Shown here: positions 2,745 to 63,067 of the stretch, piece by piece
Position numbering within the stretch: the stretch's first letter is position 1
Layout of the letters: each line of letters opens with the position of its first letter
Source: Haliotis rufescens
Lineage: Eukaryota
NCBI RefSeq assembly: GCF_023055435.1
Contig: NW_025963779.1
Location: 49,848,001 to 49,912,000, forward strand
Direction: 5' to 3'
DNA length: 64,000 nucleotides
The notes under the pieces: generated by a model
Databases searched by the model: none
What the model saw: the letters and a program-made list of their open reading frames with translations, nothing else
What the model was told of the DNA's origin: nothing
Translations under genes and position numbers: made by a program

Positions 2745-5700
2745 TTATGAAACAGCTATCCTCAAAGCACCGCATCCTTGCTTCTGTATGCTACCCCAAT
2801 CTTCTGATCAAACTGAAAGAGACAAAAGAATTATCATAACCAAAATAAATAATGCGTCACTTGTAATACACACTATGCCATGTCATTTTCACTATTACCA
2901 CACAGAATACCTAATATATCTACGTTATCTTATTATCTTTACTAACTTCTTCAACTTGAAATGGTGTCATTATGAGGTAGCCCGGCCACCATTCAAATCA
3001 ATCATTTTGTGTTCCTAATTCCGTATAGAATAATTACAGTTCTTCCTACCAAAACATTTCCGAACGACTGTTGTAGTACCCTTATCCATAGACTTCTCGG
3101 TTAACTTCGTAAAGGAGACTCTGAAACTAAATTGTAAATAAAATAAAGATTCACCACTTGGAGTGACGTGAAATTAATGAATAAAACAACTAACACATGT
3201 CATCATGTTTGAACATAACATGCAATTGTACTGTGTCCTTGTATGTTTATTCAGATAGAAATACTGTATCATTCAGGTAACATTATAGGTTACTCTGTTT
3301 CTCAATCTCATTAAAATCAGATCTTAGTTCTCGCTACCGCTAAACAAAGATCTGAGGACATCCCATTAGGGGTCACGTCAGAACGACCTTTCATCCGACC
3401 AATCAAAGCGTCGCTTACCAGATCATGAAAGTGACAGTCGGAATGTGATTTCTGATCTTGCAACCTCGAAAACTTTTACACGGGGTATTCCGAACGATAG
3501 TTACGGGCTTGAGGACTGAATCCATACAATCTAGACCATCTATTAGCTATTCCAGAATGTTTTTTTGTTCAGGTTTCAATTTTTTTATCGAGAATTTGTC
3601 AAAATATGTTTCAAAGCGTAGTCGCCAATTTGAAATTAGTGTCGTAAAGCACGAGAAAGCTGCCTTCTGATTGGCTAATGTGGACTTCTTGTCAGTCATT
3701 TCAAAGTTCGCGCAAGGTTAGTCTGACGTGACCGTAATGGGATGTCCTCAGATCTTTGTTTAGCGGTAGCGAGAACTAAGATCTGATTTTAATGAGATTG
3801 CTCTGTTTCTCGCAATGTCAATCTCGTTGTGATGCCATAAAGAAGAATAAAGGGGTGCAGATGTCACAAACCTTCTTCCATCTCTCTCGACAATACATGA
3901 CCCATTTGGCCTCTTCATGTAAGATGCCTTTAATTTGGCATCAGTGACTTCGGAATAAGGACGCCATACACACTGGATCTCATCAAACCACTGCCACTCG
4001 TATGCGCCTTGGTCTTCTGTATAAAACATGGGGGGATGACTGGATTTATTCTATGAGGTTAACAATCACCTGTATCTGTATTTCCACATATCCCTTTGAA
4101 AAGGTTAAATGTAGGGGGCTGGGTGATGGAAATAGGTGTTGTTTTATTGGTGTCACATATGAACACGAGAAGATATAACTTTTATCGACGAGTGTTGATA
4201 TAATTGTATTTGATATAAAAAAGACACAAGGATCAGATTCTATTTATCTAACATTATTCTTCCAACTGGTTCTGTTGTAGACAGTAATGAGCAGTGTGTT
4301 TGTGTAAAAAGCACTGCTAACAAGGGGCCTGTTCCACAAAGCGATCTTAGTGCTATGATTGTCGTTAGCCTATGTTAAAGTATGGGAGTTACGATCATCT
4401 TAGCGCTAAGATCGTTTTGTGGAACGGGGCCCTGCTTCAGTAGCGAAAGATTAGGGATGTCATTTGATTGTGACGTCATGGTAACCGATGACGTCACAAT
4501 GGTCTTTAAAGAATTGTGATGCAATTGCATTTCAGCGATATCATTTAGGAGAGATTTCTTGATCTTATCCAAGGATATGTCCTCGGGGGTCAGGTTTGGA
4601 TGATAAGTTATATATTTACGGTGGTAAAGACCGGCCCAATTTCCCAATTATTTCTAAAACTGGCAAAACGAAGTTATTTGAGTAAGAGGTTTGTGTATTT
4701 TCTTCTGGAACAAACTCACCATGTGATGGTCTGAGTGTTGCGTCTGCATCTGATGCGTTTTGTCTTGGGGTCGCTACATACTGCAAGGGAACCCTGTGGG
4801 GGCAGAATAAGAATATCAGATACAATCCCCAAAATACTGCATGGACATATGCAAAAGTCCTGTTTAATCGTAATCAGACCTACCTGATTAAAACATCGTA
4901 TTTGTCGTTTTCCCCATATCTATAATCGCAAATGCTTTGATTCTCCCAGATGACCTGAAATAGTTTTAAAGTCGATATATACATGTATGAATATAACAAG
5001 ATCTACTTGAGTACACAACCTAATAAAAGATCCTACGAATCCATGTGGGATTGTAGCCTTAAATATTTAACTTTTGAAACATAAACATTTACCTTCAACT
5101 GATTGGATGAAGGATGTTTATATTCAATTCTTTCACAAGATATCATTTTCGTCTCAGCAACACTCTTCTTTGAGAGCTTTCCACAATGTTATCGCATGTA
5201 TGACATGACGTACCAGTACTCTGCCTTCCATTTTTCTTATGACAGTCCCCAACAGGCCATCACAGCTGCTCGCTTCCATGTCAGGCCCTGTTTGAAGAAC
5301 AAAGAAGCGTACTCAGATGATGATGTTAAGACATGTTTATTCAGAATGAAAACTGCTTTAACTGGAAACGTGCCATGCTGTGTCATGCTGTCCAAAGCTG
5401 TAAGCACATACACAATACATCATATGTACCTCCGTGATATACCTGTACTCCTACACTGATGTGTTCCACTCCATCTGGCAGGCGATTAAGTCTCCTGGAT
5501 GCTAGTCTGGGTATATTTCTCACCTCTTTGTACCTGCATTCCTATACTGATGTCTTCCAATCCATCTGGCAGGCGAGTAAGTCTCCTGGATGCTAGTCAG
5601 GGCATATTTCTCACCTCTCTGTACCTGCATTCCTATACTGATGTGTTCCACTCCATCTGGCAGGCGAGTAAGTCACCTGGATGCTAGTCTGGGCATATTT

Positions 5701-8700
5701 CTCACCTCTCTGTACCTGCATTCCTATACTGATGTGTTCCACTCCATCTGGCAGGCGAGTAAGTCACCTGGATGCTAGTCTGGGCATATTTCTCACCTCT
5801 CTGTACCTGCATTCCTATACTGATGTGTTCCACTCCATCTGGCAGGCGAGGTTGGTCATCCACGAGTAACACATCGTACTGTTCGTTTGCACCATATCTG
5901 TACCAGTGGCATTGTCCGTTGTCCCATAGCACCCACATGTACGCTACAAAAATGTATTGGTTCAGTGTGACTTGCCCCAGATAGGTCAACAAAACGTTAA
6001 AACCTTTGTTCTTCAACTAACAGTAACAAACACACTGAAAGCACAAAATAAAAGTGGTCACTTTTTTCCTAAATCCCAACAACAAAAAGTATTGCTAAAT
6101 ATTCCTCTGGATATATATAATTTGTATTCAATTTGGTTCCCAATAACAAATGCAAATAACATGTTGTATGTAAAGTATTTAAGTAAACGAGAAGAAGATA
6201 AAACTTTATATGACTGAAATGAGAAGTACGTTTTATGAACTATGTGTTTCGTACTTTCTATCAGATGGTTCAACCATGATAGTCAGTACCAGTCCACACA
6301 CCTCCCTTGATGGCATGGTTGACGATTGTCCCTGTCCCCTCACAATCTTCGTTCTTCCACTGCCAGTCTGGGCCTCGGATCACTCTTTTCCCAAGGGGTG
6401 GGAGGTCATCCTTCACATTGACGTTGTCAAACATGTTCGTAGCTCCAAAATCCATGTCAAGATTATCGTTGACTTTCTGTATAACAGCTGTCTAGTCGTA
6501 ATGCAAAAACAAGTACCAATGCAATATCTAGATTAGGGAACATAACATATTGAATAGATATACATCATTTGGGGCATGAGTAGGCTTAAGAAGCTTCATG
6601 TATATAATATGTAGACCAAAATCTATAACTTTAGACCCTTCAGACGGGTAGAAACCTGTTCTTGCTCACCAGGGGATTCGATAAATATATATCACGTTAT
6701 GGATCCACCGTGTAAATAAACGTTCTATAGTCATGGAACAGTTGGCTTGTTTCTTTTGAGACATTTTGTACAAAAGAACATGATAGCAATGCGTATGATT
6801 AAATACTCTAGACGACCAGTGACATGCAACTGTAATATCTGACAATGTACATGAGCTTGGAATCCATTAATGACCGGATTATGTTATTAAATTACTTTTT
6901 CGGCACTTGACAGATCCGGGCAAACAGCGTCAACAATGAGGTCAATGTCCTTTACTCTGGTCAGTCGCATGGTACTGTCCATTTCTACAAATTTGATGAT
7001 TTGTGCAACGAGGATCTGAAAGTATAGTCATTCACATTAATAATTCATGTGTGCGTGCGTGTTAGCGTGTGTGCGTACATGTATAATCATGATTCGTTTT
7101 TACGCAAGCGTTATATAATTTTATAAATAGGATATTGACATACCATGATGTACTCCCTTTCAAGTTCAATACTAGGAGTGAGTGAGTTGGGTTTAACGCC
7201 GCTTTTAACAGTATTCCAGACGTATCACGGCGTGTCTGCTAATGTGGGAGGCAGGTCTTAGACGTTTACCACTTTGGTGAAACCCACGAGCACGGGTATG
7301 GTGCCGACAAACATAATCGGTGCGAACCGGGTTTCGAACCCACAATCATAGGTTTCTGACTGCCCAAGGGACGCAACTATGCACAGCGAATTGCGGCGCC
7401 TTAGACGACTGTCCATGTTAGAATTGGTCTTCAGCAACCCATTCTTTTTGTAAGGGGTTAGCGGGATCGGTTCGTCAGGCTCGCTGACTTGGTTGATGCA
7501 TGCAATCGTATTCCAGTTGCGTTGATCGTTCTTCCATGATATCAGTCACTGGATGGTCTGTTCCACACTCGATTATTTAAAGACCGTTGTCATACTGTTG
7601 GAATATTTCTAAGTGCAGCGTTAAAAACAAACAAACAACTAAACCACAGTTTACTCACTTGTATTCTCTGGTGGTTGCATATTGTCTTGACATCATGAAC
7701 AATCATTCCATTACACACATCAGCAGTCGACTGCATCATTTTCTGAAAACGATTTAGTGGCCAGATAGATATATGATAGGTAAAATATGATAGACAAAAT
7801 AGCAGGGCCCTAAACTAATACTGAAGAATATACTTCATGGAGAAACATTTTCCCCGTTAAAATAGATCCCCGGCACTGCTGGTCACAGATTCGATTACAT
7901 TGAACTGGCTGGTCGTGATCAATGGCTTGGCTGGTTTCCTGTCGTCAATCGTTGATGTTTTCATTTACAGGTTTGCCTGGTCCAGACTCAACTATTTCAA
8001 GACCGTTGTGATATATATGGATTATAGGTCACAAGTTTCACAACGAACAATTAATCTACAAAACATATACATAAACCTTTTCTGCAAGTCCATGCGGTAC
8101 AAATATGATTGGGCTGACAACGCGTCCCGTTATAGGGTTCATCACCATCTGCATCAGTGTCGCCATAAAGTGACGGAATCCCTGCATCGAGAAACTTGTA
8201 CAGTTATGACAGAAAACAAAACTCCACACATGAACTTGATCAAACGTGCGCACGGTACATATTGATAGATATACGATAAATGTAAATTAAATCCAGCCTA
8301 CTTTGTATACAATTGTACAAAAAAGCTATCATAATACAAAATATAGATTATAGAAAGTGATTCTATGATTATATTATAACATCCTTCGATTACTTAAACC
8401 ATTAAAAAAATAAAAAAATGATAACGTCCTTAGATTATTGGCCTACTGTACACACTTATTGTAACATAGGAAATCTTTACTGAGACCTAAAGATCATGAT
8501 TTTATCATCTCTTTACTTATATTATGGCAATGTTGTTGCTGTGTTGGCATTCCTGAAATAACGTACTGGGTATCAGGTGCAAACGTCAATATTATTCATA
8601 TTGATTGCATGTAACTATATATTCCCATTCCATGCAATCTTCTTATTAGAGAATGAGTGAGTTGGGTTTAACGCCGCTTTTAACAGTATTCCAGTTATAT

Positions 8701-11700
8701 CACGGCGTGTCAGCTTAATGTGGGAGGAAAGCCCGAGGTGATGCTGGTCTCAGACGTTTACCACTCCGGTGAAACCCACGAGCACGGGTATGGTGCCGAC
8801 AAACCTTGAAACATAATCGGTGCGAACCGGGATTCGAACCCTCAATCATAGGTTTCTGACTGCCCAAGGGACGCAACTCTGCACAGCGAATTGCGGCGCC
8901 TTTGACGACTGGGCCACCCGTGTCCCCAATATTCTTATTAAAGAAATACACATTTTGAGCATTAAGTCAACATGTTTTCTCTGGAAGAAGCCACTTTTCT
9001 CTGTTTTCACAAAATGTTAGAGAACATGTACAACATGGCCAGATTTGTTTGTAAAACCTGCGGCAAAACTATTTTTCCCAGTATTTCTGGAGCCAATATC
9101 AAATGGTCAGTGTAAAACATCATCATCTGATAGTTGGCAACAAGCAGCGAATCCAAGGCCTTTCTCTAAGCATGGAGTACCTGTGTGTCCTGTATTTGGT
9201 CCAGTTTGTTAGATGTTATTCCATCTGTCACGACCACGATGCGAGGTGGAACTTTCAGATACCCTCCGAAATCACAAACACCTCCTGCATTGGAATGTTC
9301 AATATAGATCAATCATGATGTTAATGTTGTGTGACGTTCGCACGTTTTGTGTATCAGTGGGTTGTATGAACATGAAATTGATGCGTGTTATAATGGGGAG
9401 AATGTAAGTTTGTTTTTGTTAATCGGATAATAAAATCAAGTTCAACTTACCTTTAGTAAGAGCTGCTACACAGACCAGCATGTAGTGGAGAAAGGGTGAG
9501 TATCCGCCGAATTCCATATCCTCTATTGTAATAAATATGAATACCAATCATATACACATATATTAGTATTAACATAATTAATTCTACACCTTAAAGTATA
9601 AACATTATTATTTTCTCACAAAGGTTTATCCGTATCTTTCTTACAAAGGTTTAATCCGTATCTTTCTTACAAAGGTTAAATGCGTATCTTTCTTACAAAG
9701 GTTTAATCCGTACCTTTCTTACAAAGTTTTATCCGTATCTTTCTTACAAAGGTTTAATCCGTATCTTTCATACAAAGGTTTAATCCGTATCTTTCTTACA
9801 AAGGTTTAATCCGTATCTTTCATACAAAGGTTTAATCCGTATCTTTCTTACACAGGTTTAATCCGTATCTTTCTTACAAAGGTTTAATCTGTATCTTTCT
9901 TACAAAGATTAAATCCGTACACGATATTATGATTTGACCGAAAACTTTCTCTTCAAAATTTACTATAAACTAATGGTAATCAATGGTATCAAGCATGAAC
10001 TATTTTGTTTTTGTCAAACATGTTTTTTCAGGATAACACCATGGTACTAGACAACAAGACGCCTGTTTCTACATTCTTGTTGACACAAGAAATAGGTCAT
10101 TAGACCGCAGACACCAGCATCAACGTAAGCCATTACACAGTTATCACATCTAATCATGTAAGCCTTGACCTTGACCCTTGACATGTGTAAAACAAATTTC
10201 CCTCACGGTTTCAAAAATAGTGCTGCGACGGCCTTCAAATTCTGACTAAACCTAAAAGAATCTCAATTTTCTTTGGTTTCCTAATTAATAGCCATTATAC
10301 CTTTAAGACCATCAATTAAACAGTGTCATGCACCTTAAGAATAATGAACGAAGAAGGTTTCTACATAGCTCCACCAAAACTCGTTGTATGGAGGTGCTTT
10401 GTTAATGCTATGATGTAGGTAGGAAACGTTTCCCAGCGGTACATCAGTATCCTCACCTACTGCATCCCTGAGGCTTTCATAGTCATTTGAAAAGTGATGA
10501 AGTACCCCGGGCCTTCCTCCTAGAGTGAGAAGGCAAATATTTTCTTCCAGACCGAATTCCTCGGCGTTGTTCTCGGTACCTTGAAGACAATAATTATATG
10601 TTTTAGGCAATGCGATTTCCGTATATTGAAAAATCCTACTGTACGTTATAAACTACTTGTTCTGTCAGTACAGAATTATTTAGAAAAGAAAATAAGAATA
10701 CTTAACACTTGTTTATATAGTGATAGAAACAAAATAGCTATAAAACACGTAAAATGTGTGACTATGTATGAATAATGCAATATTCACTTATCAATTAGCA
10801 TATTGTTTTATGTGTAAGTTCATTGAATGAAATTTTCATAAAACATACATAATTTATATTATGTAGACATATATACTCTGCACCACTACAACCAAGGAAA
10901 ACCAATCAGCGGTGGAGGCATACCGTCTATGAAGCTGTGTGCAATGCTCTGCAGCCTCTGCAAACCAAGCCTCCCCATGTCACCAGAGTTATCCAAACAT
11001 AACAATGTGTCTGTTCCCTTGTCTGTTTTTGGAACAGCAGAATTTTCTGCAAACATAAAAAAGATAGTCACAGCATTCTACCACTTGCTTCAGGACACGC
11101 CAAGAATAATATTTCTCCCTGTACTATTTCATTTCCAGATAAGGGCGTTGGAGTAGCCTTGTGGTTAAATCGTTCGCACGTCACGCCGAAAAACGGGTTC
11201 TATTCCCCACATTGGTACATATACAATGTGTGAAGCCCATTTCTGGAGCCACCCGCCGTGATATTGCTGGAATATTGCTAAAAGCGTTGTAAAACCATAC
11301 TCGTTCATTCATTTCCAGATGAGCGAGAACGTCCACTCACCACCATGGAGAATGTGCTCCACATCAGACCACCTGTTACCGCTGCCCTCCTCTATAACTT
11401 CCCTCAGCTGCTGCAGGATACTCATCGCATGGCCGTCAGATTCAGCAGTTGTTTTGGATACCGTTATATCGAAACTGAAATTGATTACAAATAAGCATGT
11501 CATAATACCATACCTCCACACAGACTGCCATACCTCCACACAGAAGCAATTGGCTTAATACATAAAGCTCCTTTAGTCCGGACTGATGCCGATTTACTAG
11601 CCCAATGCAATACCATACCCCCGTTTAACATGAATACCCCACTCAGACACAGTATACTGATCCCGAGCCGACCAGTCCTTGTTTTAGCCCCTTGACGCCG

Positions 11701-14700
11701 AGCACCAGACAGGGTAGTACCATCCCCTAACGTCTTTTGGTATCACGCAGCCGGGGATCGAATCTTCCGCTCTATCACTAGACCACGGAGGCGGTCATGT
11801 AATATTTGGACCATAGTGTACTTAATAATATGTATACATACATACGAAACATCTCCCCGCATTATATACCTGAATAAGATTGTGTGTTATCAAGACGAAG
11901 CCCATCGCGATCAGAGTATGACAAAAATGCTTTGCTAAGCATGGCAGTATACCAAGCCAATGCATGAAGATAACGTACCAGAAAACGTAATGGAAAATCC
12001 AACGATGTTATTTCCTAACATAAAAACTTTCGTCTACCAGTATATATACCTTAAAATTTGGGCCGCTAATGCGTCGTAACTATGAAGAGGAGCCTTCTTC
12101 GATTTAGTTTCAGAACTCTTTAGATTGACATAATTCCTATCAGATAGGTCTTTTTGGTGACGATTTTCCCCCATTCCGAAACTAGTGTCTGTCTTCCAAG
12201 TCCTGTCATCTGCTTCTGCTCGATCTGCCCAACCTAGGGCCGAGTCGCTGGCTGTCAGTCTTTCCTTCCTCGTGACATCGACGTTGCGGCCATTCTCTTC
12301 GTTCATCTGATTTTCGCACTGTACCTCCTTTGCGCTTGCATAAAACATCTCGTAGTCCGCGGAAGGAGAAATGGAACTTGTCTTAGAGCACCCCATAGCA
12401 TTGGCATCCTTCAGTCTTCCACCATACGAGTCACCATCAATGTAGGGCGCCTCGTACTCAGATTCATATGTTGGCAGCCCTTTCTTGTAAGCGTGTAATG
12501 TCCCCAGTCCATGTTCTTCTGAGCTAGCCTTACATTTCCCCGTAACCTGATTTCGATCACTCTTCTGGTTTGAGCTGATTGGTGACAATTCATGGCCGAT
12601 TTCATCCTCTTTATGCTTCCGAGAGTTGAGATTATTCTCAGGAGGTTGTCTCTGATCGGACATTTCTGTACGGGGGGAACAATATGTCCCCTCTTGTTCC
12701 TCCACATCACTGAGCTCATATACGACGCTCTCAATGGAACTGTAATGTAAGGATGTACATTGTTTACTCTAATTATCTCCAACTCCACCAACTCCAAAAG
12801 ATGCACATCTCTAAACTGAACTTTATACAAGCATTAATACATTTTATGCTGAAAATATTCACAGACGCAACGATACAGGATATAGTTTAACAAATTATTA
12901 TAAATATAAATGACATTTAATTATGAAGGGGCAATTTGGCTTTCTCATATGAGCTCTATTATTCGGTGTCCTCCAGAATTCGTGTTGATTGAAAACCAAA
13001 TTTACAATCAAAGTGATTTTGAAACAGCATCAACGTCTGGTTTCCTCCAAAACGGATATACCCATTTAACTTCCAAGTCGTGATCGTATCCGTAACGTGA
13101 GCAAATCATTGCCACATCAGTTTAAGTCAAATTCAAGACGTTGACGTCAAGGATTCCTTTCAGTTCTACCGTACGGCAAGTGCTACTGCTTATCTATGCA
13201 GCTGCCTTCACCCCACACCCAAGCATAGCTAAAATACTCACACGTCAATGTATTCACTAACCTCGGGGTAGTACATGTTTTTCTCTTTATGCGTTCTCTG
13301 CATATATCATGTTGAGGTGTGCGCTTAATGAGTGATGTACTCCATGACAATGGTTATACAAACCTTGTTTTGTGCAACTGAGACTTGTTTGAGAAACACC
13401 ATCGATTGGCATAGGACGGGGCGGACATGTTCACCAGTCGTATCTTCATCTCTATCCCACCATGGGACAAGTGGGACAGAAAACGCTTGAAAATATTTCT
13501 TAGTCCCGGTGCATTCGTTCTCATGGCTTTCATTGAATGTTTGTCCTCATGTTGAACTATGAACGTGATGGGGCTCAATCTGACGTTAATCAACTTCGCA
13601 TTGAATGTCTGGAACATGGCACTGACGAACTGAAACATGTGACCATCGGCTGTGTCAACATGGAGACTCATGTGCCGTTCGAAGTCTTCTGAATGGTTTT
13701 TGGGTGCCAACGTGATAGATGAGCAGACAGCGTGTTCGGTAATAGGGTCCTCCCAATACGCTGACATGAGGCACTCGCCATCTGAAGAACAACGTTAACG
13801 TGTAGAAAATGTTCCATACATATAGATACAAAATGGTCTAAAACACTGATGAATCCTATAAACTTGTGAAACATAGTCATAAAGATGCCGAAACTTTATG
13901 TGGTTAAAAGACTGTTTCGTGCAATGTAGATTTCTGTCGAAAGTATTGTTTCTAATCCAGTTTGTTACATTCCACATCCTTAGATTGCTTAAAGCCTAAT
14001 AGTGGATAGACGTCTTTAGAAGGTATATAGCCAAAATACAAACATGCATCATTGAACATCTTAGTGTCGATAGCTTCGTTACTGTAGAAATATGAAATGA
14101 CTTTAATATAACAATACCACTAGTAGCAAGCAACCCTGTATTGACATGAAAAGTGAAACATGATCAAAGCTATCAACACACAATGTCATTTAGAAAGTGG
14201 TCAAATGTAACATGATATATTTGGGGAAATACTTTCTGTCTTTCAGACGGGGCTCAACCCAAAACAAGTACGAGAATCTGTACTTTACTAAGAAAGTGTA
14301 CCAAATATAACATGTGTTACATGATCAAAACATTGAAACACAAAAAAAGCACACCATACTTGTGACCTTTGGGAAGCGAGAAAGATGCAATATAGGAAAG
14401 CATGTTACCACATAGAACACTGTATTATCTAGGATTTTATGTATTACCAGTCCGTCACCTTTAATGGTCTTGTTTGTACTGAGTCTCTCCAGTAGAGTAT
14501 CATCAAAGCACAGGTCCACAACTGGCGGACACATGGGCGAGCGAACAATAGTCTTGCCTCGGATTTCACGGCAATGTACCTCAGCCATAGCCTGAAGAAC
14601 ACGGGGGACATTTCCAATAATATTAAGTAGGCACATAAAACTAACATTCAAATAAACCCCCATTCTTACATCAGATGACATTTTGAACGTGCATTGCCTT

Positions 14701-17427: not shown

Positions 17428-17640
17428 GCTAGCCCACTGAGATACCATGCCGCCATTTAACATAAATTCCCCCACTCAAAGACAATATACTGACTCCGAG
17501 CTGACCTGTCCTTGTTTAAGCCCCTTAATGCCAAGTGCCAGTCAGGGTAACAAGTACCATCTTTTACCGTCTTTTGGTATGATGCTCCCGGAGAACGAAC
17601 CCCGGACCTACCGTTTTACCACAAGACCACGGAGGCGGTC
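17428..17640 (-). mobile_element. tRNA-derived SINE, family 4
   Basis: Colinear match to 11596-11797. Confidence 0.75.
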
Positions 17641-34531: not shown

Positions 34532-34540
34532 AAATGGAAA

Positions 34541-47670: not shown

Positions 47671-47801
47671 GTACATGGTTTACCACCTTTCTACTCAGTA
47701 CTGTAGAAAAACAGTAGAAAAACAGTAACCAAACCCCGGTGTTTCTACAGTTTCAGTTACTGTTTTTCGGCAGACCTGGTTGTCGGTCTGGAATGGATGT
47801 G

Positions 47802-53001: not shown

Positions 53002-53033
<32 letters not shown>

Positions 53034-54349
53034 CTGTGTTTGTGTGTGTGTGTGTGTGTGTTTTGTAACAAAACAACAAACAAACACACTTTTGAATATA
53101 CCTAACCTTAATATTTCGTTTCGAGATATATACTTGTATGTTATAACATCACAAAAGCCGACCGTGTGCAAATTTGGCATTGTTGAAAACATTTCAGCAT
53201 CAATATCCTACCACATTTCTGTACAAAATGTGAAAATGTACCAACACATTATGTTCTATATGTTTGTAACAAAGTCAAATAACTCTTCGTACTCACCATA
53301 TTTCCAGTTCGTATACTCCATCCTTTCCAAATCTATGGGTTGTTATGTTACCGTTATTCCACCGCACCTGATGATGATAGGATACAAAGATGTGTTGGTC
53401 CAAGTGAGATACAAGCGCATACAAATAAGTTGTCTCCACAGCTGGACCTTTCTATTTACTTGTAAACGGAGTTTGTTCAAAAGCCAAAGGGCCAATAATC
53501 AAAATGCTTTTTAGTCCTTTGTAAATGATTCTGTAAAGAATCGTCCGTCGGGTGAAGTGAAAATATTTGTAAAATTGTGGTGGATTATTTTATGATATTA
53601 TTCATTTTATTTATTCTGGTTCTTTTTTTTTCGACGGGAGGGGAGGGGGGAAATGGGATACGACAAAGGTTAACTGCGCTTCACATTTTGATCTTGTATT
53701 TTCATCATTAAAATTGACGTACAGTCGCGACTGGGTGAATTTTTTCTACAAAAGTACTTCAGCCATTTACAAAATATTGTTTTTGGATACAATCTGTCTG
53801 AAAAGTTTCTGTAAGTTTTGTCCTCTTGCCGGCCGCCGTCATATACTCGTTTTAAGTTCAACACGTATTTGCTTGTAATAGGAAACAGATTACAGCTGAA
53901 CTGTTCACTTTTGCTTCCAACTCTATCCTGTTCATCTACACTCTGTTCATTTCATCGCGGTTATATTCAAGTTTGGACGCTGGTGAGATGATTCTGCACC
54001 CTGCATCAGCCAGTATGTGACCGACGATGTCCCAGCGTAAGTAGATCTACTGCATTTATCCAATATATTGGCTTTCTTCGGTGTCCCTGCTTCTACATGA
54101 TAATGTTCCATGATAGTTCCGGGCCTTTGGATATTGCATGGTGCAAGAGAGACACTAAGTCTTGTTAATAACCCCTACCTTCACTTCCTGGTCTCCCCTC
54201 CGCCTGATGACGACACCGGTGTTACCATCTACCCCGTCCTGGTTCAATGACTGCCAGCCCCGACCTGACATAGCATCACAAGCAAATCCATAATTCATAC
54301 TCCCTTGTCGAGTATACGGTTTATCCTGTTGTAAAATACACACACAGAG

Positions 54350-54387
<38 letters not shown>

Positions 54388-57300
54388 GGGGGGGGGGGGT
54401 GTAGGGGGTAGAGGAGAGTGCTAAAGAACGTTACATTTTTTTATAGGTATTTCACAGCACAATTTTCCATTACGTGAGACATATCAAGAGACGTCAGCAA
54501 GTCCTGAAAAACATGGCTCTGAGTATTAGAGATCATTTTCAACAACATAACACGAGGATTCTCCAAGAAGCATTTGCCAATGTTATCTTAAGATGTCATA
54601 AGCCGCACATAAGAACAGAATTACATACTGTACCGGTACAGAGATGCTTTTAGTATGTGGCGTTAATACTATCAATGTTTTCTTCAGACACAAGGATGAT
54701 ATGGATATCCCCAGAACAGTCCGATATCATTTACAACGGAAGTCAACGTCAGAAATGCGCAGTATGAAATGTGTTCACCTCGTTTTACTCTGACCCCAAG
54801 TTGGAGGAACTGATCTGACTCCGGGATGCGATGACGTCCGTCAACTGTAGCTACATCAAAGACACCATTTAGGTTGTAGCGGTACCGGTTCCTCTCGCCG
54901 CTGTCCCAGAGTACCCACACCCAGTCTGGAAGGTAACATGATCATGATCATTATGAAAAAATACACCGGGATTTTTTACATATCTATAAGGAACATATGC
55001 ATTCCAATCAACGAAAACTGACTTCAAATCGTAACATAAGCACAACATTCATATAACATGAAGAACATGACCACATACTGTCACAATTATTTTTGAATTT
55101 CTTTTATATCAGAATACTGTAAGAAATCACTTTATCCACGAACATCATTCTAAACTTAATAAGCATGTTTTAAGTCAGATTTTAACTTTGTTATGGTTTC
55201 ATTCAAGCGTGCCGTCGAAATTAGGGCATTTTGCAAAGGAAAAGAGCAGGAGCTATAGGTGGAGGCGAATGTTCCGAATATGGCGTCGATATTGACTCTA
55301 GTCCAACAATGGCAATAGAACATGCTAAAATTGAATGTGATTTTAAATTAAACTGCAATTCCAAAAAATAAACTTTCCAAATGGTATGTCTGTGTTTACG
55401 TGGCCATGGCAACCCGATCAAGGAGTCTTACTTTCGTTCTCATCGTGGTTGATGATGGTGCCCACGCCCTGCAAGTCCTGATCCTCCCACTTCCAGTCTT
55501 TACCTCTCATCACTCTGCTCCCAAGGGGTGCTAGGTCAGGGTTCTCGTACACATTGTCAAAGTCGTCAGGTTTCGCGTCTTCATTCTTACTTTTGAGCTT
55601 CTCACTCACAGCAGCTACAATCTCATCCTGTCAGAAGAACAACGACAGGTCTCAACAGATGTAACCTCAAATAAGACACGTCTTTAGGTAATTGTCCCAA
55701 TTAGGTTACGATTAGATCTGACTAGATTATCGATGCATTTTGGCGATTGTGTGAGTGGCGGGTGCTACCGGGGCGCAGGACATGTTTATCCTTTTCACGA
55801 ATACCTGGTGTCATCAATAATTTTCAGTGATCCATTCATATCATTTTCACCGCTGTTTTGCCGTTTACTCCCAATGGTATCTGTTTCGTCGGATAATTGG
55901 GACGACACGCTGGTTTTATCTTGGGTTGACGTTTTATATTTAGGCGTGTCTGTTCCGTGCATCACCTAGCTACAAGTCAGTTACGGCTATGTACACATGC
56001 TTCTTTTTCTCAATATACTACTGAGAGTTTGTTCAGGACAATTCGTCTGATAAAGATATATTGGGCGCGTTATGGAGCCTCCAGTGCATCACTTACCATG
56101 TCGCTCGGATTGACTTCGCCCACGATAGCATTAGCTACAGCCTCTATCGCCTGCTGGACGTTCGGGAAGTCGTCCTTACTGGAGCGGACACACGCATAGA
56201 TCTTGCCTATACTGTCCTGTAATAGAATCATATTATTTCTTCAGTCATCATGCACGTATGTATTGTATTTACACTTCTAAAAGCTACAAGCAGGTAGTAG
56301 TTCTCAAAGGGTCGTCAGTGGGTTACACTATCGAGTTCAACGTCTGTCAGAACATTTTTCCAGAAAAAGTATTCTATCGACTGAATAGATCACTCTATGC
56401 AGAACATTGTTAGTACCTGTATTTGATAGTAACGTATCAGCTTTGGTATATCCTCTGCCTCTGCCACCTGCCCATTACCAAGTTTGGCAAGAGACGTCAG
56501 CAAGTCCTGAAAAACATAGCTCTTGGGATTAGAAATTGGTCCTCAGCTTCTATTCGTCGATTGTGATACCATTATGTTCATGTTTAATACATAAAACCCA
56601 GGAAGAACAACTAACACACATAATGCACAGAACTAATGGCATATTCCTGGACTGCAGTCAACATCAGTCTTACTGTATCAGCGTCGCCGACTGGAATCCA
56701 GACAATGGGAGAGGGCTTGGTCTTGTGTTTCTTGGATCCTAGTTCCATCATGAGATTGATGATGGGAACTTTAGCCTGAAACATATACCTAACATATTTT
56801 CAATTCAGTTATCTACTAAAAACGAGATAATACATTCCACAGTTTGTCTGTAAACTTGAATTGAAAGTATATATTTTATGAAAACGATAAAACGAGATCT
56901 GCCACGTTTCTTTTCCAGGTCATATATATATGCCTTAATAACAATCCTTTATGCTTGGAACTGAGACCACCTATTCCAGAATTAAGTCAATAACACGTTG
57001 AATATGTCAGAAGGAGCAGCATTATATTATTGGTGAAAATAACGCACGTTTGCTGACTGGATGTCGGGGCCGAAATCTTGACTTTCGTCTGTCAGTTTTC
57101 CATCAGTGATCACAATAATCCTGGGACGGAGTCGGTGAACTTTGGTCACAGTAAGCACACCACCTAGTCGAATTAAATTCAAGGGGCTAAGCACACATTG
57201 ACTTTCACAATAGTCACCAATGAGTTAATATATATTAATGTTCCTGTAATTTGTCTCTTGTAAGGGATTGACAAAGTAAATATCAACATACATTGCCTCG

Positions 57301-60300
57301 TCATCAAATTGTGATATTGTTATATGGAGTAGTATATGTTATGTGACAGTATCACCTTTCCCCTGGATAGCTGCCAAAGCGACGATCAGCATTTCAAATA
57401 GTGGTGACCTGCCTTCTGGTTTTAGTGAATCTGAAGACAGAGACAAAAACATAAATACGTTTAACCAGTTACATTATTATATACTATGTCTGAGGTAGTT
57501 GAGTGAAGGGCAAAATCTAGATACTGACCGAGAGCATCTCTGACTTTGGAGTAGTCGTTAGTAAGCTGCTGGACCACCCTTGCTCGACCAGACACGCTGA
57601 CCACAGCAACGTTCTCCTCCAGAGTATGATTCTCAGCGATATCCTCAAGACCTGTACAGAGAAAGGTGGCTTGACTTTGTGCCTCAGCTGTGTGTGGATA
57701 ATTGAACTGTAACTGAATAGTGTTTTACGCGCAGACAGTAATATACCTGGTAAGTGACTGTAAATATTCTGAGTTACAGACGGTGATTGAATATAAAACG
57801 TCAACGCCAGAGAATAACCATCCTTGATTATCCGAAGAAACAGATTCCATCAGCTAAAATGCAAAATAGCTGTGAAAATTATATGAATGCATAAAGAAGT
57901 AAGTGTTTCTTGCATGGCGCCCCCCGAAAGCTTGGGGATTTGGCCAAGAAGTTAAACTTAACCTTCAGGTGTAAAGATGATCTGGTATCGTTCAATAATG
58001 GTCAAACAGCCAATTCGCTTTCACTGATTTTGAATTGTAATATAAATATATATTAATTCAATGTAAATATCAATACTAACGTCTGATATATATTGGAATA
58101 AAACCAAACTTTGAACTAATCAGACGTTAGTAATGATATTTAAATTGAATTAATATATATATTATATATATCATTGGTAATACCTACGTAAACTTTGGGC
58201 GCAAGACATTTAGACCAGCAGTGGACATCACCATGAGCACCACTTGTGCTCCCCTTCTTGCTGTTCTGTGTCTTAATGCATTTGACGTGGAATTTCTGCT
58301 CGGGTTGGCAAAGTTGGTAATTTGGCTATGAAGTTACCTTAAGCTTCAGGTAAATCGATGATCGTTCAATAGTCATCAAATAGCCAATTCCCTTCCACCT
58401 ATATACCTACCTGCACTAGAAATAAAGGAATTCAGTGATATCCCCTCATCTGTTTCATATTTAGTGAGTGAGTGAGTGACTATGGTTTTACGCCGCTTTT
58501 AGCAATATTCCAGCAATATCACGGTGGGGCACACCAGAAATGGGCTTCAGTTTCATATTTAGATCTGAAGATACAGAGTGAACACACTCTCAAAACGTTA
58601 ACTCCCCTTGTCAAGCAGCTTTCCAGCAGCTTTGTTGTCTACAGTCACAACTTTGGAGGTACAACCTAGCATGCTCATATGGTCGACATATGGAGGATAT
58701 TTCGAATTTTGACGCATCAGAGAAAAAATAATGTCCCATGCAATTACGTATCTCGACTTGAACCATATTTTCCCCTGCTTTTTCAGGTGAACAGTTTGAC
58801 ATGCCATAGTTTGCATGTGCTTGCGACGGGGACTAATGGTGGGAAAGGACACGCTAACATTTTCCCGACCAGCTGTTTTCATTACGTTTTGAGAGTGATG
58901 CATGAATACATGCTTATCATAGTTGGAACGGTAACACGGATACTGCACTTTGCAGATATTTCATATGATTATGGAACCCGTAAAAATCTATGGTAGAATA
59001 GGTCTTCATCAACCCATGCTTGCCGTAAAAGTTGACTAACGGGATCGGGTGGTCAGGCTCGCTGACTTGGTTGATGCATGTCATCGATCCCAATTGGATC
59101 GATGCTCATGATGTCAATCACTGGATTGTCTGGTCCACACTCGATTATTTACAGACCGCCGTCATATAGCTGGACTATTGCTGAGTGAGGCGTTAAACAA
59201 CAAATAAATCATATGATTATGGAAATGGTCTTGTCGCTTTTATATAAGTTTTACGATCCAATCCGTCACGGCTTAGCTATGCAGCATGTTTAATATTGCG
59301 CGAACCAAATGTTCAATATCAACCTACCATCGATGAATGTGTCGGCGATGTCCTTCATCTGTCGGAAGGCGTCTCCAGCCATACTCTGGGAGCAGTCGAG
59401 GCAGAGGATGGTATCAAGAGACTGAGCTCGAGGGGAATTATCTGGTGGCACAGGTCGCATATGGCATTAGTACGTACAGACATAATTAATAAAAGTAATT
59501 ACCTCGAAGTTAACCAACTGCAGTAATTGTATCTTATATAGTGATCAACCTTTTGACATCCAAGTGTTATTTGTTTCGACAATCATGCTTACAACTGTCG
59601 TATTCACTGCTGATATTAAATAGCATTAACCCTTTACAGCCCGTCCTCCATGTAGACAGCAATCCCGGCGCGGTTGTGGGCTCCCGTTTCTTAATGTCTA
59701 GATGACGTCAAACTGATGCCAATATTCACACTATGAGGGGCCAGAGACCACCCACCATGGTTTTGAATCCATTACTTACCATCTTCAAGGGCTGATTGTG
59801 CCGACTTCTCTATTGCCTTTAGGCTTACTTCAGAGTCGCGTCCAATCGCTGACTTAGCTATTGCCATCAGTCTATCTGTTGACGCCCCTGAAAAGACAAT
59901 ATTGATATCACACATGATATGTGTTTTTAAATTCAAGGTGTTTTGTTTTCATTGTAGTTGTTTCACAGACTTCTAAATGCGAGCTGTAACCAAATACCCC
60001 AGGGACTATTTGTTCCTCACACATATCCGTGCATACATTGTATTTGTTGTATTAGTGAGTGAATTGAGTTTAACGCCGCTTTGAACAGTGTTTCAGTTAC
60101 ATCACGGCGTGTCAGCTTACTGTGGGAGGAAGGCCTCACGTTATGCAGGTCTTAGACGTATATTTTATTATAGAAGACTGGGGTCATGATTGCTATACCA
60201 GCTGGTGCTTACCTTTAACTTTTGGCTTTGCACCACCAGCAGATGTGGCAAATCTGTTGACAGAAATACAGTGATAAAACAACTGCCACTGAAAAAAAAG

Positions 60301-63067
60301 GCTCAAGAAAAAAGCAGAGCATTTTGACTGGTGTATGTTAATCGATGTTAACTGCCGGGTAAAAGAAATTCTACACCCATGTTTGATGGTGGCTAAACCT
60401 GAAACAAACGAGAAATGATTATTCGATTATGTACAGTAAAATACGGTTATAACGAACACGCATATAACGAACTGACCAATATGACGAACTTATTTTTCAG
60501 TCTCGACCATTTGTTGTATAAATGCTGTATACATGCTTATAACGAACTGCGGTTAGTACGAACTAAAATTAATGGTCAGTTCGAGTTCGTTATAACCGTA
60601 GTTTAATGAACTTGTTATGGGTATCATGGTTGTGTTTCTGCCTTAAGTTTGCATTGTTCGATGACTGTTTTCAGCCTTGTAACGTTTTGATAAAATTTGT
60701 AATGTTTCGATCAAATCCAATTTTCAATATACTTTTTTTTGTCCGTCGGCTTAGTTCCCTTTACTCGAATACCATCTGATTTGGGGTGTTTATATTGTGG
60801 AAATAACATATTTGAAGAAAATTATTATTTCTTTATTTGGGATTTGAGATTTTTACAGAAATTCTTTCCTTACTGTTGGACACCTCCTTCTTCATGGGTT
60901 GCAGGATGAGGAGGAGGCTTGCTCCCTGTGGGATCGGTGTCAGTGTGATCGACGCCTGGTGACGTCGCAATGGGACGAACGTCAGATTGATGACGTCCTG
61001 TACCTTCCATACGGCCTTGCTGCTGAGCTCCAGTGAATACTGTCGATGGTGTTTGGGATTCCGCTGTTCTTTGACTTGAATTTAAAAAAGTGTTAATGAT
61101 GATCTTCTACATAGTGTTGTGACCAATAACTGTTGCAAGTTATTCCCAGTTCGCCCCAATTATGTTTCTAGGTTTGTCAGCACGGATTCATCGTTGGGTT
61201 GTCCTCCAACATTAGGCTGACACACCGTGATACAACTGGAATACTATTCGGTGTAACACTTACTTTGTAAAGCNNNNNNNNNNNNNNNNNNNNNNNNNNN
61301 NNNNNNNNNNNNNNNNNNNNNNNNNNNNNNNNNNNNNNNNNNNNNNNNNNNNNNNNNNNNNNNNNNNNNNNNNNNNNNNNNNNNNNNNNNNNNNNNNNNN
61401 NNNNNNNGGTTGTTTTTTTTGGTTTTTTTAATTTATTTTATTTATTTATTTATTTTATTTTATTTTTTTTATTTTTTTTGGGGGGGGGGTTGTAAAGGGG
61501 GGGGGGGGCGGGGGAGTCAGCTTAATTTAATGGAACTACTCACGGTTGATGAAACACGTTTTCTGGACGATGGGTTTGAGCAAATGCAGCGGTGGCCGTC
61601 ATGGTGCCTGGTGGAACGTTGCTGCCAGGCAGATACATCCAAGTGGGTCCATCGTTCGTGTGCTTTCCCTTGACTTCTGGAGTTTGACTTAGTGTGCCAG
61701 CCTCTGCTACTTCATCAAAATCAGCTAGGGTATTAGTTTCTTCTTTCTTAAGTTCCTGCAACCCTATACTTATGCTCTTCACTCTGTCTAAAATTGACTT
61801 GATCTGGCTTTCTTGTGCAAGTGGACCTTGCTCCTTTGAATTCAATCTGTCGTGCTTATCAGCATCTTAAAGGAAAACCATTATTATCATAAGTTGTAAT
61901 AAATACTGCAGGTTTTGCATCACCGTGTGATGCGTAAGTAAATATGAGAGGCTTGCTTTTACCTATACTTAACACTTTACATTTACTACAGATACATGTT
62001 TCTTAATCGAGTTTTTGACTAGTACTATAAAACCAGACTAGTACGAGCAGCCACACACATGTTACATAAGTGATCGTATATATCTTGAACGAGACGTTAA
62101 TCCGCATGCCATCTCACTTCTATATCCCGTTAATTAGCCTGTGTTTTATAGTAGAGCACATCAGTGGTACAATGTCAGTGCGACTGATAGGAAGATAGGA
62201 TGATGGACTTGAGGTATTATGGAATGGAACGTATTTTCATCTCTACTACAAAAAAGTCAATGCTGTAAAAGAATCTGATTTAAAACACTATATTAGAAAA
62301 GGACAGAAGGAATGCTGAATGTATGATGTTTGTTGACAAGACAAGACAAGAAGTTTATTGTATGAAAGGCCTCCGGCCCATATACAAAGTATAAATACAC
62401 ACAATGTATACATACTTTCAACATACATGTGCGTTCTAGGAGACATTTGTATTTACAAGTTCTTGCCGAATATTGAGTGCTTGATGGAGAAATTGAGCTA
62501 CACTGTAGATTACACCGGAAGATTGATTAGACATAAGTGATATAAGGGATGTGGTACATTGCTGTTTAAGGTATGTTTGTTTAACGCCGCACTCAGCAAT
62601 ATTCCAGCTATATGACGTCGGTCTGTAAATAATCGAGTGTGGACCAGACAATCCAGTGATTAACATCATGAGCATCGATCCACGCAATTGGGATACGATG
62701 ACATGCATCAACCAAGTCAGCCAGCCTGACCACCCTATCCCGTTAGTCGCCTCTTACGACATGCATGGGTTGCTGAAGACCTCTTCTAACCCGGGTCTTC
62801 ACGTATCGGAATGCAGGAATGAAGAGTTGAGCCTTGATTATACTTTCAAACATTTGCACTATATTATTGTTTGAATCCAATAAGTAATACAATGTATTTA
62901 TGAAACAGCACCCGACACCGTAAATGCATGTTATGACTTGTATGTTACTATTGTCACAACTGATTTCACAACTCGTTTAAGTATATAAAGCCATGATATA
63001 AGTGCGTGTACCTGACCTACAGTACAGCTCGTCGTCCTCCAGTTCGTCGGCCCGTGCTTGTGGTCTG
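47802..63067 (-). CDS. Gene B: paralog of gene A; low-complexity N-terminus + VWA + 2x MIB/HERC2 + WWE (>=780 aa, 5' end unresolved)
   Basis: Phase-consistent exons: 63067-63012, 61865-61544, 61074-60874, 60253-60213, 59887-59780, 59441-59328 (DTILCLDCSQSM), 57651-57529, 57430-57356, 57163-57048 (RIIVITDG), 56775-56674, 56506-56417, 56216-56097, 55627-55432 (LGSRVMRGKDWKWEDQD), 54925-54779 (WVLWDSGERNRYRY), 54264-54179, 53367-53297, 52911-52823, 48462-48300 (VWRWKDGRQWRLY), 48208-48135, 47857-47802 (TAA). Exon sizes 123, 120, 147 and 71 are identical to gene A. Confidence 0.85.
48655..52773. repeat. ~4.1-kb 62-bp satellite (~66 units) in a gene B intron; each unit copies the upstream exon end and donor
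   Basis: Unit gtgtacaacacatacctgtgtcctggggtcaagtcttcagtaaggtggcactctgtgtaccc. On the minus strand, CAGGACACAG|GTATGTGT equals the predicted junction at 52823. Confidence 0.95.
53002..53060. repeat. (TG)n microsatellite
   Basis: Direct observation; another (TG)n followed by poly-G at 54353-54400. Confidence 0.95.
55690..55990 (+). mobile_element. Penelope-like pLTR/3' relic
   Basis: ggcgggtgctacc..gcaggacatgtttatcctt..acctggtgtcatc resembles molluscan Penelope-type terminal repeat sequence (from memory). Confidence 0.4.
58046..58160. repeat. AT-rich 42-bp inverted repeat (hairpin or foldback MITE)
   Basis: Arms 58046-58087 and 58119-58160, 2 mismatches. Confidence 0.8.
58465..58549 (-). mobile_element. 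5'-truncated family 3 SINE with perfect 13-bp TSD
   Basis: TSD gtttcatatttag at 58452-58464 and 58550-58562. Confidence 0.9.
58995..59205 (+). mobile_element. SINE-like repeat, family 1
   Basis: Reverse complement of 62573-62803. Confidence 0.85.
60434..60608. mobile_element. Tigger/pogo-like MITE
   Basis: ta|cagtaaaatacggttataacgaac ... gttcgttataaccgtagtttaatg; repeated internal tataacgaac motifs. Confidence 0.75.
61274..61407. other. Assembly gap (134 N)
   Basis: Run of N inside a gene B intron. Confidence 1.
62573..62803 (-). mobile_element. SINE-like repeat, family 1 (best-preserved copy)
   Basis: Five copies in the window. It shares a 3' tail motif (gtttaacgccgc..caatattccag) with families 2 and 3. 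Confidence 0.85.

What the first reader, a model, noticed from the sequence alone, without database searches (positions are those of the whole stretch)
2745..63067. Paralog pair with an unusual VWA - MIB/HERC2 - MIB/HERC2 - WWE architecture and no catalytic domain
Seen: two ~20-exon minus-strand genes (A 2745-14815, B 47802-63067+) that appear in the ORF track only as fragments. They share domain order, intron phases and several exact exon lengths (123, 120, 147, 71 nt) despite strong protein divergence. Known: MIB/HERC2 domains are substrate-binding modules of the E3 ligases Mind bomb, HERC2 and HECTD1. WWE domains occur in Deltex, RNF146, HUWE1 and PARPs and often read ADP-ribose. Both usually sit with RING, HECT or PARP domains. 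Here none is visible and B stops about 18 aa after the WWE. I know no named protein with this layout. Inference: a lineage-specific intracellular adaptor or decoy family linking ADP-ribosylation and ubiquitin (possibly Notch or immune) signalling.
Basis: partly seen in the sequence, partly recalled or inferred. Interest (0 to 1): 0.85.

Follow-up and report, generated by a model that had tools for sequence, protein, structure and literature searches.

The report
Abalone vWA–MIB–MIB–WWE adaptor gene array
The two genes are real and intact, but they are two members of a tandem array of about 21 fast-evolving red abalone genes for enzyme-less scaffold proteins, whose domain layout has already been catalogued (never studied) in a brachiopod among expanded invertebrate immune/apoptosis adaptors.

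Summary
Observation confirmed. Gene A has 18 coding exons (14588-3015, 980 aa). Gene B has 24 coding exons, 20 in the window and the first four up to 3.8 kb past its end (1096 aa). Both are intact GT-AG minus-strand genes with the order N-terminal α/β domain, linker, vWA, MIB/HERC2 x2, C-terminal WWE. No RING, HECT or PARP domain is present.

The shared exon lengths (123, 120, 147, 71 nt) hold, and 11 consecutive intron phases are identical. The assembly gap lies in B's intron 6.

They are not a pair. The genome is Haliotis rufescens, and about 21 paralogs lie in roughly 490 kb of one chromosome. Each has orthologs in other abalones, all annotated "uncharacterized protein". The core also occurs in caenogastropods.

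The layout is not new. Kaur et al. 2021 (eLife, supplement) list CARD+TRADD-N+coiled-coil+vWA+MIB+MIB+WWE proteins in Lingula.

It has no Pfam match and a ferredoxin/RRM-like fold. Elsewhere in molluscs it is fused to STAND-NTPase/ankyrin proteins. It may be a divergent TRADD-N, which was not proven.

Likely function: a non-catalytic immune/apoptosis adaptor (inferred). RNA evidence could not be obtained. The scan had not noted this family on other DNA.

The parts
3015..14588 (-). Gene A coding span: 18 exons, 980 aa, intact
   Evidence: Ortholog-guided GT-AG model with no internal stop. It is 68.7% identical over its full length to H. rubra LOC124280423 (P0055).
14459..14588 (-). A exon 1: start codon and N-terminal beta extension of the N-domain
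13364..13781 (-). A exon 2: core of the N-terminal alpha/beta domain (no Pfam family)
   Evidence: Profile hits in 21 cluster genes. No Pfam match.
12050..12739 (-). A exon 3: acidic, Ser/Thr-rich linker
11341..11474 (-). A exon 4: linker before the vWA domain
10924..11046 (-). A exon 5 (123 nt): vWA start; the MIDAS motif reads D-x-S-x-D here
7659..10579 (-). A exons 6-10, rest of the vWA domain: 10579-10457, 9522-9451, 9284-9181, 8181-8077, 7742-7659
   Evidence: The TDG motif is kept.
6896..7015 (-). A exon 11 (120 nt): helical linker between vWA and MIB1
6302..6491 (-). A exon 12: first half of MIB/HERC2 domain 1
   Evidence: Pfam E 6.6e-5.
5797..5943 (-). A exon 13 (147 nt): second half of MIB1 and start of MIB2
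   Evidence: Pfam E 7.9e-5.
5440..5850 (.). 91-bp x 4.5 tandem repeat that copies the end of exon 13 plus its splice donor into intron 13
   Evidence: TRF; repeated exon-end translations.
4884..5287 (-). A exons 14-15 (5287-5214; 4954-4884, 71 nt): rest of MIB/HERC2 domain 2
   Evidence: Pfam E 3.8e-4.
4716..4793 (-). A exon 16: linker
3015..4039 (-). A exons 17-18 (4039-3872; 3126-3015 including the stop codon): WWE domain, with the stop 13 aa after it
   Evidence: Pfam WWE E 1e-3; terminal exon conserved in paralogs.
47802..63067 (-). Gene B, exons 5-24 (the part inside the window). Exons 1-4 lie at window-equivalent 67840-64297 in L001.
   Evidence: 24-exon GT-AG model of 1096 aa with no internal stop. 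It is 92.5% identical to H. cracherodii P0063.
61274..61407 (.). Assembly gap, inside B intron 6 (between exons 61865-61544 and 61074-60874)
   Evidence: Ortholog residues 436|437 are contiguous across it.
56417..59441 (-). B exons 10-15, vWA domain with canonical MIDAS D-x-S-x-S: 59441-59328, 57651-57529, 57430-57356, 57163-57048, 56775-56674, 56506-56417
   Evidence: Pfam VWA_2 E 3.8e-3 and 1.3e-3 at colinear profile positions.
56097..56216 (-). B exon 16 (120 nt): helical linker
53297..55627 (-). B exons 17-20, two MIB/HERC2 domains: 55627-55432, 54925-54779, 54264-54179, 53367-53297
   Evidence: Pfam E 1.4e-6, 1e-4, 0.074 and 6e-3.
52823..52911 (-). B exon 21: linker; the exon whose 3' end and donor seeded the satellite
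48676..52773 (.). 62-bp x 66 satellite filling B intron 21
   Evidence: TRF.
47802..48462 (-). B exons 22-24, WWE domain and an 18-aa tail with the stop: 48462-48300, 48208-48135, 47857-47802
   Evidence: Pfam WWE 23.5 bits, over the cut-off. Best PDB sequence match is DTX1 WWE 8r5n..

Best explanation
A and B are two intact members of an array of about 21 tandem genes, roughly 490 kb long, on a Haliotis rufescens chromosome. Each encodes a cytoplasmic multidomain protein with no enzyme domain. The order is: an N-terminal ferredoxin/RRM-like α/β domain, a disordered or coiled linker, a vWA domain with a mostly intact metal site, a helical linker, two MIB/HERC2 peptide-binding domains, and a C-terminal WWE domain.

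Shown here: the gene structures, the domain order, the lack of a catalytic domain, the array, orthology across abalones, and fast divergence with conserved cores.

Inferred: the proteins are signalling adaptors of the invertebrate immune/apoptosis type described for lineage-specific TRADD-N expansions. The WWE would read ADP-ribose-type marks, and the MIB domains and the vWA would hold protein partners. The N-terminal domain would couple the protein to partners that carry the same domain (STAND-NTPase/ankyrin proteins) or to ubiquitin ligases acting in trans.
For: Gene models and reading frames.

Domains: and on full-length relatives. In every one the only Pfam families are VWA/VWA_2, MIB_HERC2 x2 and WWE, with the WWE ending within about 5-20 residues of the C-terminus.

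Array: 16 complete colinear copies, 1 truncated copy and 1 copy cut by the edge of the fetched DNA lie in the 344 kb examined. Genome-wide, 21 N-domain exons lie on C1:49.46-49.94 Mb. All 14 WWE-exon hits fall on the same stretch.

Species and annotation: the contig length of 94,228,061 equals that of H. rufescens XP_046350xxx 'uncharacterized protein LOC1241313xx/1241314xx'.

Orthologs: B is 92.5%, 67% and 62% identical to its H. cracherodii, H. rubra and H. asinina counterparts. A is 69% identical to its H. rubra counterpart.

Constraint: pN < pS in the 14 paralog pairs printed (those with the lowest pS, of 60 compared). Examples are g03-g12 (554 codons, 0.22 vs 0.64) and g02-g08 (520 codons, 0.19 vs 0.67). 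The MIDAS motif D-x-S-x-S is kept in 13 of 16 copies and the TDG motif in 11 of the 12 copies where that exon was found, the twelfth reading SDG.

No signal peptide or membrane segment.

Context: the N-domain is also fused to nSTAND3 plus ankyrin repeats (Nucella P0047), to ankyrin repeats (Haliotis P0031, P0039) and to vWA (Pinctada P0044). The Lingula proteins with CARD+TRADD-N+coiled-coil+vWA+MIB+MIB+WWE are listed among TRADD-N expansions that the authors propose act in immunity or apoptosis (PMC8195603).
Against: No expression or splice-junction data for A or B could be obtained. No functional datum exists for any member.

Binding of ADP-ribose by these WWE domains is untested, and the family's consensus at the position I recall as the adenine-contacting Gln of RNF146 is mostly Glu (the RNF146 numbering is from memory).

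A's metal site is altered to D-x-S-x-D.

The N-domain could not be tied to TRADD-N by sequence. By structure the evidence is weak: 1f2h scored Z 4.7 at rank 14 with one model and was absent from the top 50 with the better model. The Lottia protein that carries this domain is not in the stored part of Kaur et al.'s TRADD-N table.
Confidence: 0.55

Rival explanations
1. Substrate-receptor subunits. The proteins recruit targets through the MIB, WWE and vWA domains for a separately encoded RING or HECT ligase, so they belong to an E3 complex and are not signalling scaffolds.
For: In MIB1, HECTD1 and HERC2 the MIB/HERC2 domains are substrate-binding modules. The best PDB sequence matches of the family are MIB1 4xi6 and HECTD1 2dk3/3dkm. 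The WWE is most like that of DTX1.
Against: No ligase gene was seen in the array. The only other gene found in the window is a C2H2 zinc-finger gene. This reading overlaps with the best explanation and is not exclusive of it.
Confidence: 0.2
2. Decoys or inhibitors. As catalytically dead look-alikes of MIB/Deltex-type ligases, they would soak up ADP-ribosylated or ligand proteins, or pathogen effectors.
For: No catalytic domain is present. Paralogs have diverged rapidly, to 12-32% identity in the N-domain and 30% in the core, as expected for genes in a conflict.
Against: The layout with a vWA and an N-terminal adaptor-like domain is conserved from brachiopods to gastropods. That argues for a positive signalling role. 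No evidence bears on the decoy idea directly.
Confidence: 0.1
3. Developmental (Notch-pathway) regulators that bind Notch ligands through the MIB domains.
For: The MIB domains resemble the MIB1 region that binds Notch-ligand tails.
Against: About 21 rapidly diverging tandem copies is not the pattern of a conserved developmental gene. The ZZ, ankyrin and RING parts of Mind bomb are absent. Canonical MIB1/MIB2 genes exist elsewhere in the genome.
Confidence: 0.04
4. Decaying pseudogenes, or artefacts of stitching unrelated exons together.
For: A and B themselves were not found among the database proteins retrieved. One truncated copy lies at C1:49689194-49690811, and one N-domain exon carries a TAA.
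Against: Frames of 980 and 1096 aa stay uninterrupted across 18 and 24 GT-AG exons. Full-length orthologs exist in other species. pN < pS. Family proteins P0041, P0086 and P0088 (1076-1648 aa) sit on Logan contigs of 3.7-5.6 kb, too short to hold introns, so these contigs look like transcripts.
Confidence: 0.03

Closest known systems
[quoted passage not shown] 4-source data 1
   Same: The C-terminal module is identical in content and order (vWA, two MIB/HERC2, terminal WWE). It is preceded by a linker or coiled coil and a small α/β domain in the same position. Both are lineage-specific multi-copy families in marine lophotrochozoans, and both are unstudied 'uncharacterized proteins'.
   Different: The abalone proteins have no CARD or other Death-like domain. 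Their N-domain could not be shown to be TRADD-N, and its G-[S/C] turn motif has decayed in most array members (A has S-P, B has R-C). The abalone array is larger (about 21 copies) and strictly tandem. I could not fetch the Lingula sequences for a direct alignment.
Mind bomb (MIB1/MIB2) E3 ligases
   Same: MIB/HERC2 domains occur in tandem. They give the best sequence matches among solved structures (4xi6).
   Different: There is no ZZ finger between the MIB domains, and there are no ankyrin repeats and no RING fingers.
WWE-domain proteins Deltex (DTX1/2/4), RNF146, HUWE1 and PARPs
   Same: They share a WWE domain. The best PDB match of B's WWE exon is the DTX1 WWE.
   Different: There is a single WWE at the extreme C-terminus, with no RING/DTC, HECT or PARP catalytic domain. 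Ligand binding is untested.
Other intracellular vWA-plus-effector tandem families in the same genome (scan notes s1-805544, s1-816307)
   Same: These are also tandem arrays of intracellular vWA fusion proteins in abalone.
   Different: The C-terminal module differs (GIY-YIG-like). They lie on other DNA. I did not examine them.

Membership tests
TRADD-N + vWA + MIB_HERC2 x2 + WWE proteins (Kaur et al. 2021, Lingula) | vWA domain N-terminal to the MIB domains | tested here: met
   VWA_2/VWA hits in B's exons and in all full-length relatives. The MIDAS motif is kept in 13 of 16 copies.
TRADD-N + vWA + MIB_HERC2 x2 + WWE proteins (Kaur et al. 2021, Lingula) | Two consecutive MIB/HERC2 domains followed by a C-terminal WWE | tested here: met
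   The stop codon shortly after the WWE is conserved.
TRADD-N + vWA + MIB_HERC2 x2 + WWE proteins (Kaur et al. 2021, Lingula) | TRADD-N domain: RRM-like β1-α1-β2-β3-α2-β4 fold with kinked helices and a tiny-residue+Ser/Cys motif at the β2-β3 turn | tested here: inconclusive
   The AF2 models (pLDDT 75 and 84.5) show that topology, with each helix broken in two and G-[S/C] at the hairpin turn in non-array members. There is no sequence link. 1f2h scores only Z 4.7 in one search and is absent from the top 50 in the other.
TRADD-N + vWA + MIB_HERC2 x2 + WWE proteins (Kaur et al. 2021, Lingula) | N-terminal CARD or other Death-like domain | tested here: not met
   No Death-fold Pfam hit in A, B or their relatives. 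The segment before the α/β core is predicted as β-strands.
Mind bomb E3 ligases | ZZ finger, ankyrin repeats and C-terminal RING fingers | tested here: not met
   None in any family member. They are present in the true MIB1/2 hits.
Deltex / RNF146 / PARP WWE proteins | WWE coupled to a RING-DTC, RING or PARP catalytic domain | tested here: not met
   The WWE is terminal and no such domain is present.
Deltex / RNF146 / PARP WWE proteins | Binding of ADP-ribose, iso-ADP-ribose or PAR by the WWE pocket | not testable with these tools
   Only sequence similarity to the DTX1 WWE is available.

The most novel reading that the evidence does not exclude
The N-terminal domain is not TRADD-N. It would then be a new mollusc-wide homotypic adaptor domain that links STAND-NTPase/ankyrin sensors (Nucella P0047; Haliotis P0031, P0039) to ADP-ribose-reading vWA-MIB-MIB-WWE scaffolds. 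This would be an undescribed signalosome that joins NLR-like sensing to ADP-ribosylation and ubiquitin signalling, diversified into about 21 specificities in abalone.
Probability: 0.2. Interest if true: 0.7.

Novelty: new variant of a known kind. Interest (0 to 1): 0.5.

Why it matters
The module vWA-MIB-MIB-WWE is shared by brachiopods and gastropods, so it is an old lophotrochozoan invention, and it has never been studied. It joins a probable reader of ADP-ribose marks to peptide-binding domains known from ubiquitin ligases.

An array of about 21 genes with 1:1 orthologs across abalones and 30-70% protein divergence fits the pattern of a diversifying immune repertoire. Abalone suffer economically important infections (withering syndrome, herpesvirus, Vibrio), so the array offers a concrete set of candidate response genes.

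The shared N-terminal domain also gives a testable link to STAND/ankyrin proteins.

Tried and rejected

N-domain identity, all without a clear answer:
- Pfam gave nothing, even at E up to 10.
- The ESM Atlas gave no usable hit.
- A profile against PDB sequences gave nothing.
- Foldseek's best E-values were 0.017-0.046.
- VIA-align's best Z was 5.9-6.3, to generic ferredoxin-like, RRM-like and eIF4E-like folds.

Other blanks:
- The Lingula homologs were not retrieved by the word-indexed protein search.
- No paper mentions the LOC identifiers, or TRADD-N together with abalone.
- A first all-pairs dN/dS script timed out and was rerun.
- Logan fragments belonging to H. rufescens paralogs each map to a single exon, so they say nothing about splicing.

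They were built only inside the sandbox, to check reading frames and to compare them with proteins already returned by the tools.

Considered and rejected: secreted matrix vWA proteins, because there is no signal peptide and the domains are intracellular; and a retrocopy at C1:49.948 Mb, because its long open frame merely reads through an intron.
Full report
**What the window is.** The window is G000:C1:49848001-49912000 of a 1.33-Gb assembly. Proteins found with a profile of a window exon sit on a contig of exactly the length of C1 (94,228,061 bases). They are RefSeq "uncharacterized protein LOC1241313xx/1241314xx" of Haliotis rufescens, the red abalone.

**Checking the observation.** Stop-free minus-strand fragments of region A and region B match each other colinearly at 37-59% identity. 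Pfam was scanned exon by exon, by reference.
- In A, MIB_HERC2 halves lie at 6273-6491, 5705-6016 and 4883-5002, and a WWE start at 3763-4050.
- In B, VWA_2 lies at 59293-59466 and 57464-57724, at consecutive profile positions.
- In B, MIB_HERC2 lies at 55421-55630, 54687-54941, 54158-54430 and 53296-53451.
- In B, WWE lies at 48299-48517, above Pfam's cut-off.

Full-length guides came from orthologs: H. rubra P0055 for A and H. cracherodii P0063 for B. With them I placed GT-AG boundaries.
- A has 18 coding exons, from ATG 14588 to the stop at 3015-3017, giving 980 aa.
- B has 24 coding exons and 1096 aa.
- B starts about 3.8 kb beyond the window. Its exons 1-4 lie at window-equivalent 67840-64297 in locus L001.

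Neither model has an internal stop.

Intron phases agree for 11 consecutive introns, and the proteins are 30.6% identical over the vWA-to-WWE core.

These joined models were built only in the sandbox, to check frames and identities.

**The assembly gap.** The N run at 61274-61407 lies between exon 6 (61865-61544, GT donor) and exon 7 (61074-60874, AG acceptor). In the black-abalone ortholog the two exons encode adjacent residues 436 and 437. The gap is therefore intronic and hides no coding sequence. Only the intron length (469 nt as assembled) is unreliable.

**Not a pair.** I searched B's exons against 344 kb of contiguous sequence around the window (C1:49618001-49962000). The search finds the same exon series (vWA 1-6, helical linker, MIB1a/b, MIB2a/b, WWE), in the same order, in 16 complete genes on both strands. 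It also finds one truncated copy and one copy cut by the edge.

Genome-wide, a profile of the N-terminal exon finds 21 copies on C1 between 49.46 and 49.94 Mb, and only five weak hits elsewhere. All 14 hits to B's WWE exon lie in the same stretch.

Each of A and B has its own ortholog in other abalones. B is 92.5% identical to its H. cracherodii ortholog, 67% to H. rubra and 62% to H. asinina. A is 69% identical to its H. rubra ortholog. The duplications are therefore older than these species, and the proteins change fast.

In ungapped, alignable core segments, pN is below pS in the 14 paralog pairs printed, which are those with the lowest pS of 60 compared. Examples are 0.22 vs 0.64 over 554 codons and 0.19 vs 0.67 over 520 codons. 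The estimate is biased towards conserved segments, and dS is saturated. It still argues for constraint, not decay.

**No catalytic domain.** In 17 of the 19 full-length relatives scanned that carry the family's core, VWA/VWA_2, MIB_HERC2 x2 and WWE are the only Pfam families. These relatives come from four Haliotis species, Littorina, Batillaria, Babylonia and unlabelled transcript-like contigs. The two exceptions each carry one extra sub-threshold hit, and no member has a RING, HECT or PARP domain. The WWE ends within about 5-20 residues of the C-terminus.

In the array itself, the terminal WWE exon is followed by a stop within a few codons in at least 14 paralogs. B has one further 17-codon exon. 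The protein has no signal peptide and no hydrophobic segment.

Upstream of the vWA, every paralog has a short first coding exon and a conserved exon of about 420 nt (A: 14588-14459 and 13781-13364). These are followed by an acidic, Ser/Thr-rich linker. The domain has no Pfam family.

A profile search of 1.84 billion representative proteins found 52 hits at E up to 0.001. Every one whose source was looked up is molluscan, apart from one fish fibronectin-repeat protein at E 4e-5. Most are the vWA-MIB-MIB-WWE proteins. The same domain also heads other architectures:
- a Nucella protein with an nSTAND3 NTPase and about 20 ankyrin repeats;
- Haliotis ankyrin-repeat proteins;
- a Pinctada protein with a coiled coil and a vWA;
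- short proteins of Lottia and Babylonia.

AlphaFold models (pLDDT 75 and 84.5) give a β1-α1-β2-β3-α2-β4 sandwich. Both helices are broken in two, and an extra N-terminal strand pair is added. Structure searches return only generic ferredoxin-like, RRM-like and eIF4E-like matches, with Z at most 6.3 and Foldseek E at best 0.017.

**What is already known.** Kaur, Iyer, Burroughs and Aravind (eLife 2021, PMC8195603) describe lineage-specific expansions of TRADD-N domain proteins in marine invertebrates. They propose that these act as adaptors or switches in apoptosis and immunity. Their Figure 4-source data 1 lists four Lingula anatina proteins that combine CARD, TRADD-N (DEDD2 clade), a coiled coil, vWA, MIB_HERC2 x2 and WWE (coiled coil before the vWA in two, after it in the two that also start with a coiled coil), and relatives that stop at the vWA. 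The main text never mentions WWE (0 occurrences in the main text).

The paper describes TRADD-N as an RRM-like sandwich with kinked helices and a tiny-residue+Ser (sometimes Cys) motif at the β2-β3 turn. The mollusc N-domain occupies the same position in the architecture. It has that topology, and it carries G-[S/C] at that turn in members outside the array. Most array members have replaced the motif (A: S-P; B: R-C).

Against the assignment, no sequence method links the two. TRADD-N itself (1f2h) scores only Z 4.7 in one search and is absent from the top 50 in the other. The Lottia member is not among the five Lottia entries in the stored part of the authors' table. I rate the assignment at about even odds.

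**How it most likely works.**
- Shown: an enzyme-less, cytoplasmic protein with four kinds of interaction module, encoded by a large, old, fast-diverging tandem array.
- Established for the domain families (general knowledge; the structure matches are): MIB/HERC2 domains bind peptide motifs of ligase substrates, WWE domains of RNF146/Deltex type bind ADP-ribose derivatives, and vWA domains bind partners through a metal site. That site is kept here in 13 of 16 copies, and A has D-x-S-x-D.
- Inferred: the proteins are adaptors that gather ADP-ribosylated and/or peptide-tagged targets. Through the N-terminal domain they would couple to proteins carrying the same domain (STAND/ankyrin sensors) or to ligases acting in trans, in an immune or cell-death pathway.

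The rivals are a substrate receptor of a separate E3, a decoy, a Notch regulator, and pseudogenes. They are weighed in the Rival explanations section.

**What could not be done.** RNA-seq support for the junctions could not be obtained. The only transcript-level hints are RefSeq models of orthologs and three family proteins of 1076-1648 aa on contigs of 3.7-5.6 kb. Those contigs must be intronless, and they come from other species.

**Verdict.** The finding is a new, CARD-less, massively tandem gastropod variant of a catalogued but unstudied lophotrochozoan adaptor family. It is moderately interesting. The scan had not noted this family elsewhere.

Noticed in passing
window 48676-52773: A 62-bp x 66 satellite fills B's intron 21. 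It begins right after exon 21 (52911-52823), whose end and donor it copies. It is the subject of scan note s1-805603.
   Followed up: partly
window 5440-5850: A 91-bp x 4.5 tandem repeat copies the 3' end of A's exon 13 together with its GT donor into intron 13. Each copy re-encodes the start of MIB2. It is the subject of scan note s1-805665.
   Followed up: partly
window 23193-26183 (-): A single 996-aa open frame between A and B encodes a protein with many C2H2 zinc fingers (Pfam zf-C2H2, zf-H2C2_2).
   Followed up: partly
window 46706-47327: A 52-bp x 12 tandem repeat (96% matches) lies about 500 bp downstream of B's last exon.
   Followed up: no
window 7065-7376, 8618-8966, 60020-60151, 62439-62753, and many introns of other paralogs: A short interspersed repeat recurs in both orientations in introns across the array, and its translations recur in the ORF lists. 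It is probably a SINE.
   Followed up: no
G000:C1:49689194-49690811 (-) and C1:49512038-49512424 (+): The first is a truncated copy with only MIB1 and WWE exons. The second is an N-domain exon with an in-frame TAA. Both are likely dead members of the array.
   Followed up: no
protein P0005 (H. cracherodii, isoform X3 of B's ortholog): This annotated isoform ends just after MIB1 (919 aa, no WWE). It would be a shorter product lacking MIB2 and WWE.
   Followed up: no
G000:C568:56702-737546, C46:26338707, C168:7810609: Five weaker hits to the N-domain lie outside the array. They are probably the ankyrin or STAND-type proteins that share the domain.
   Followed up: no
protein P0078 (eukprot transcriptome, 1348 aa): This protein is made of about 15 consecutive MIB/HERC2 domains and nothing else.
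   Followed up: no
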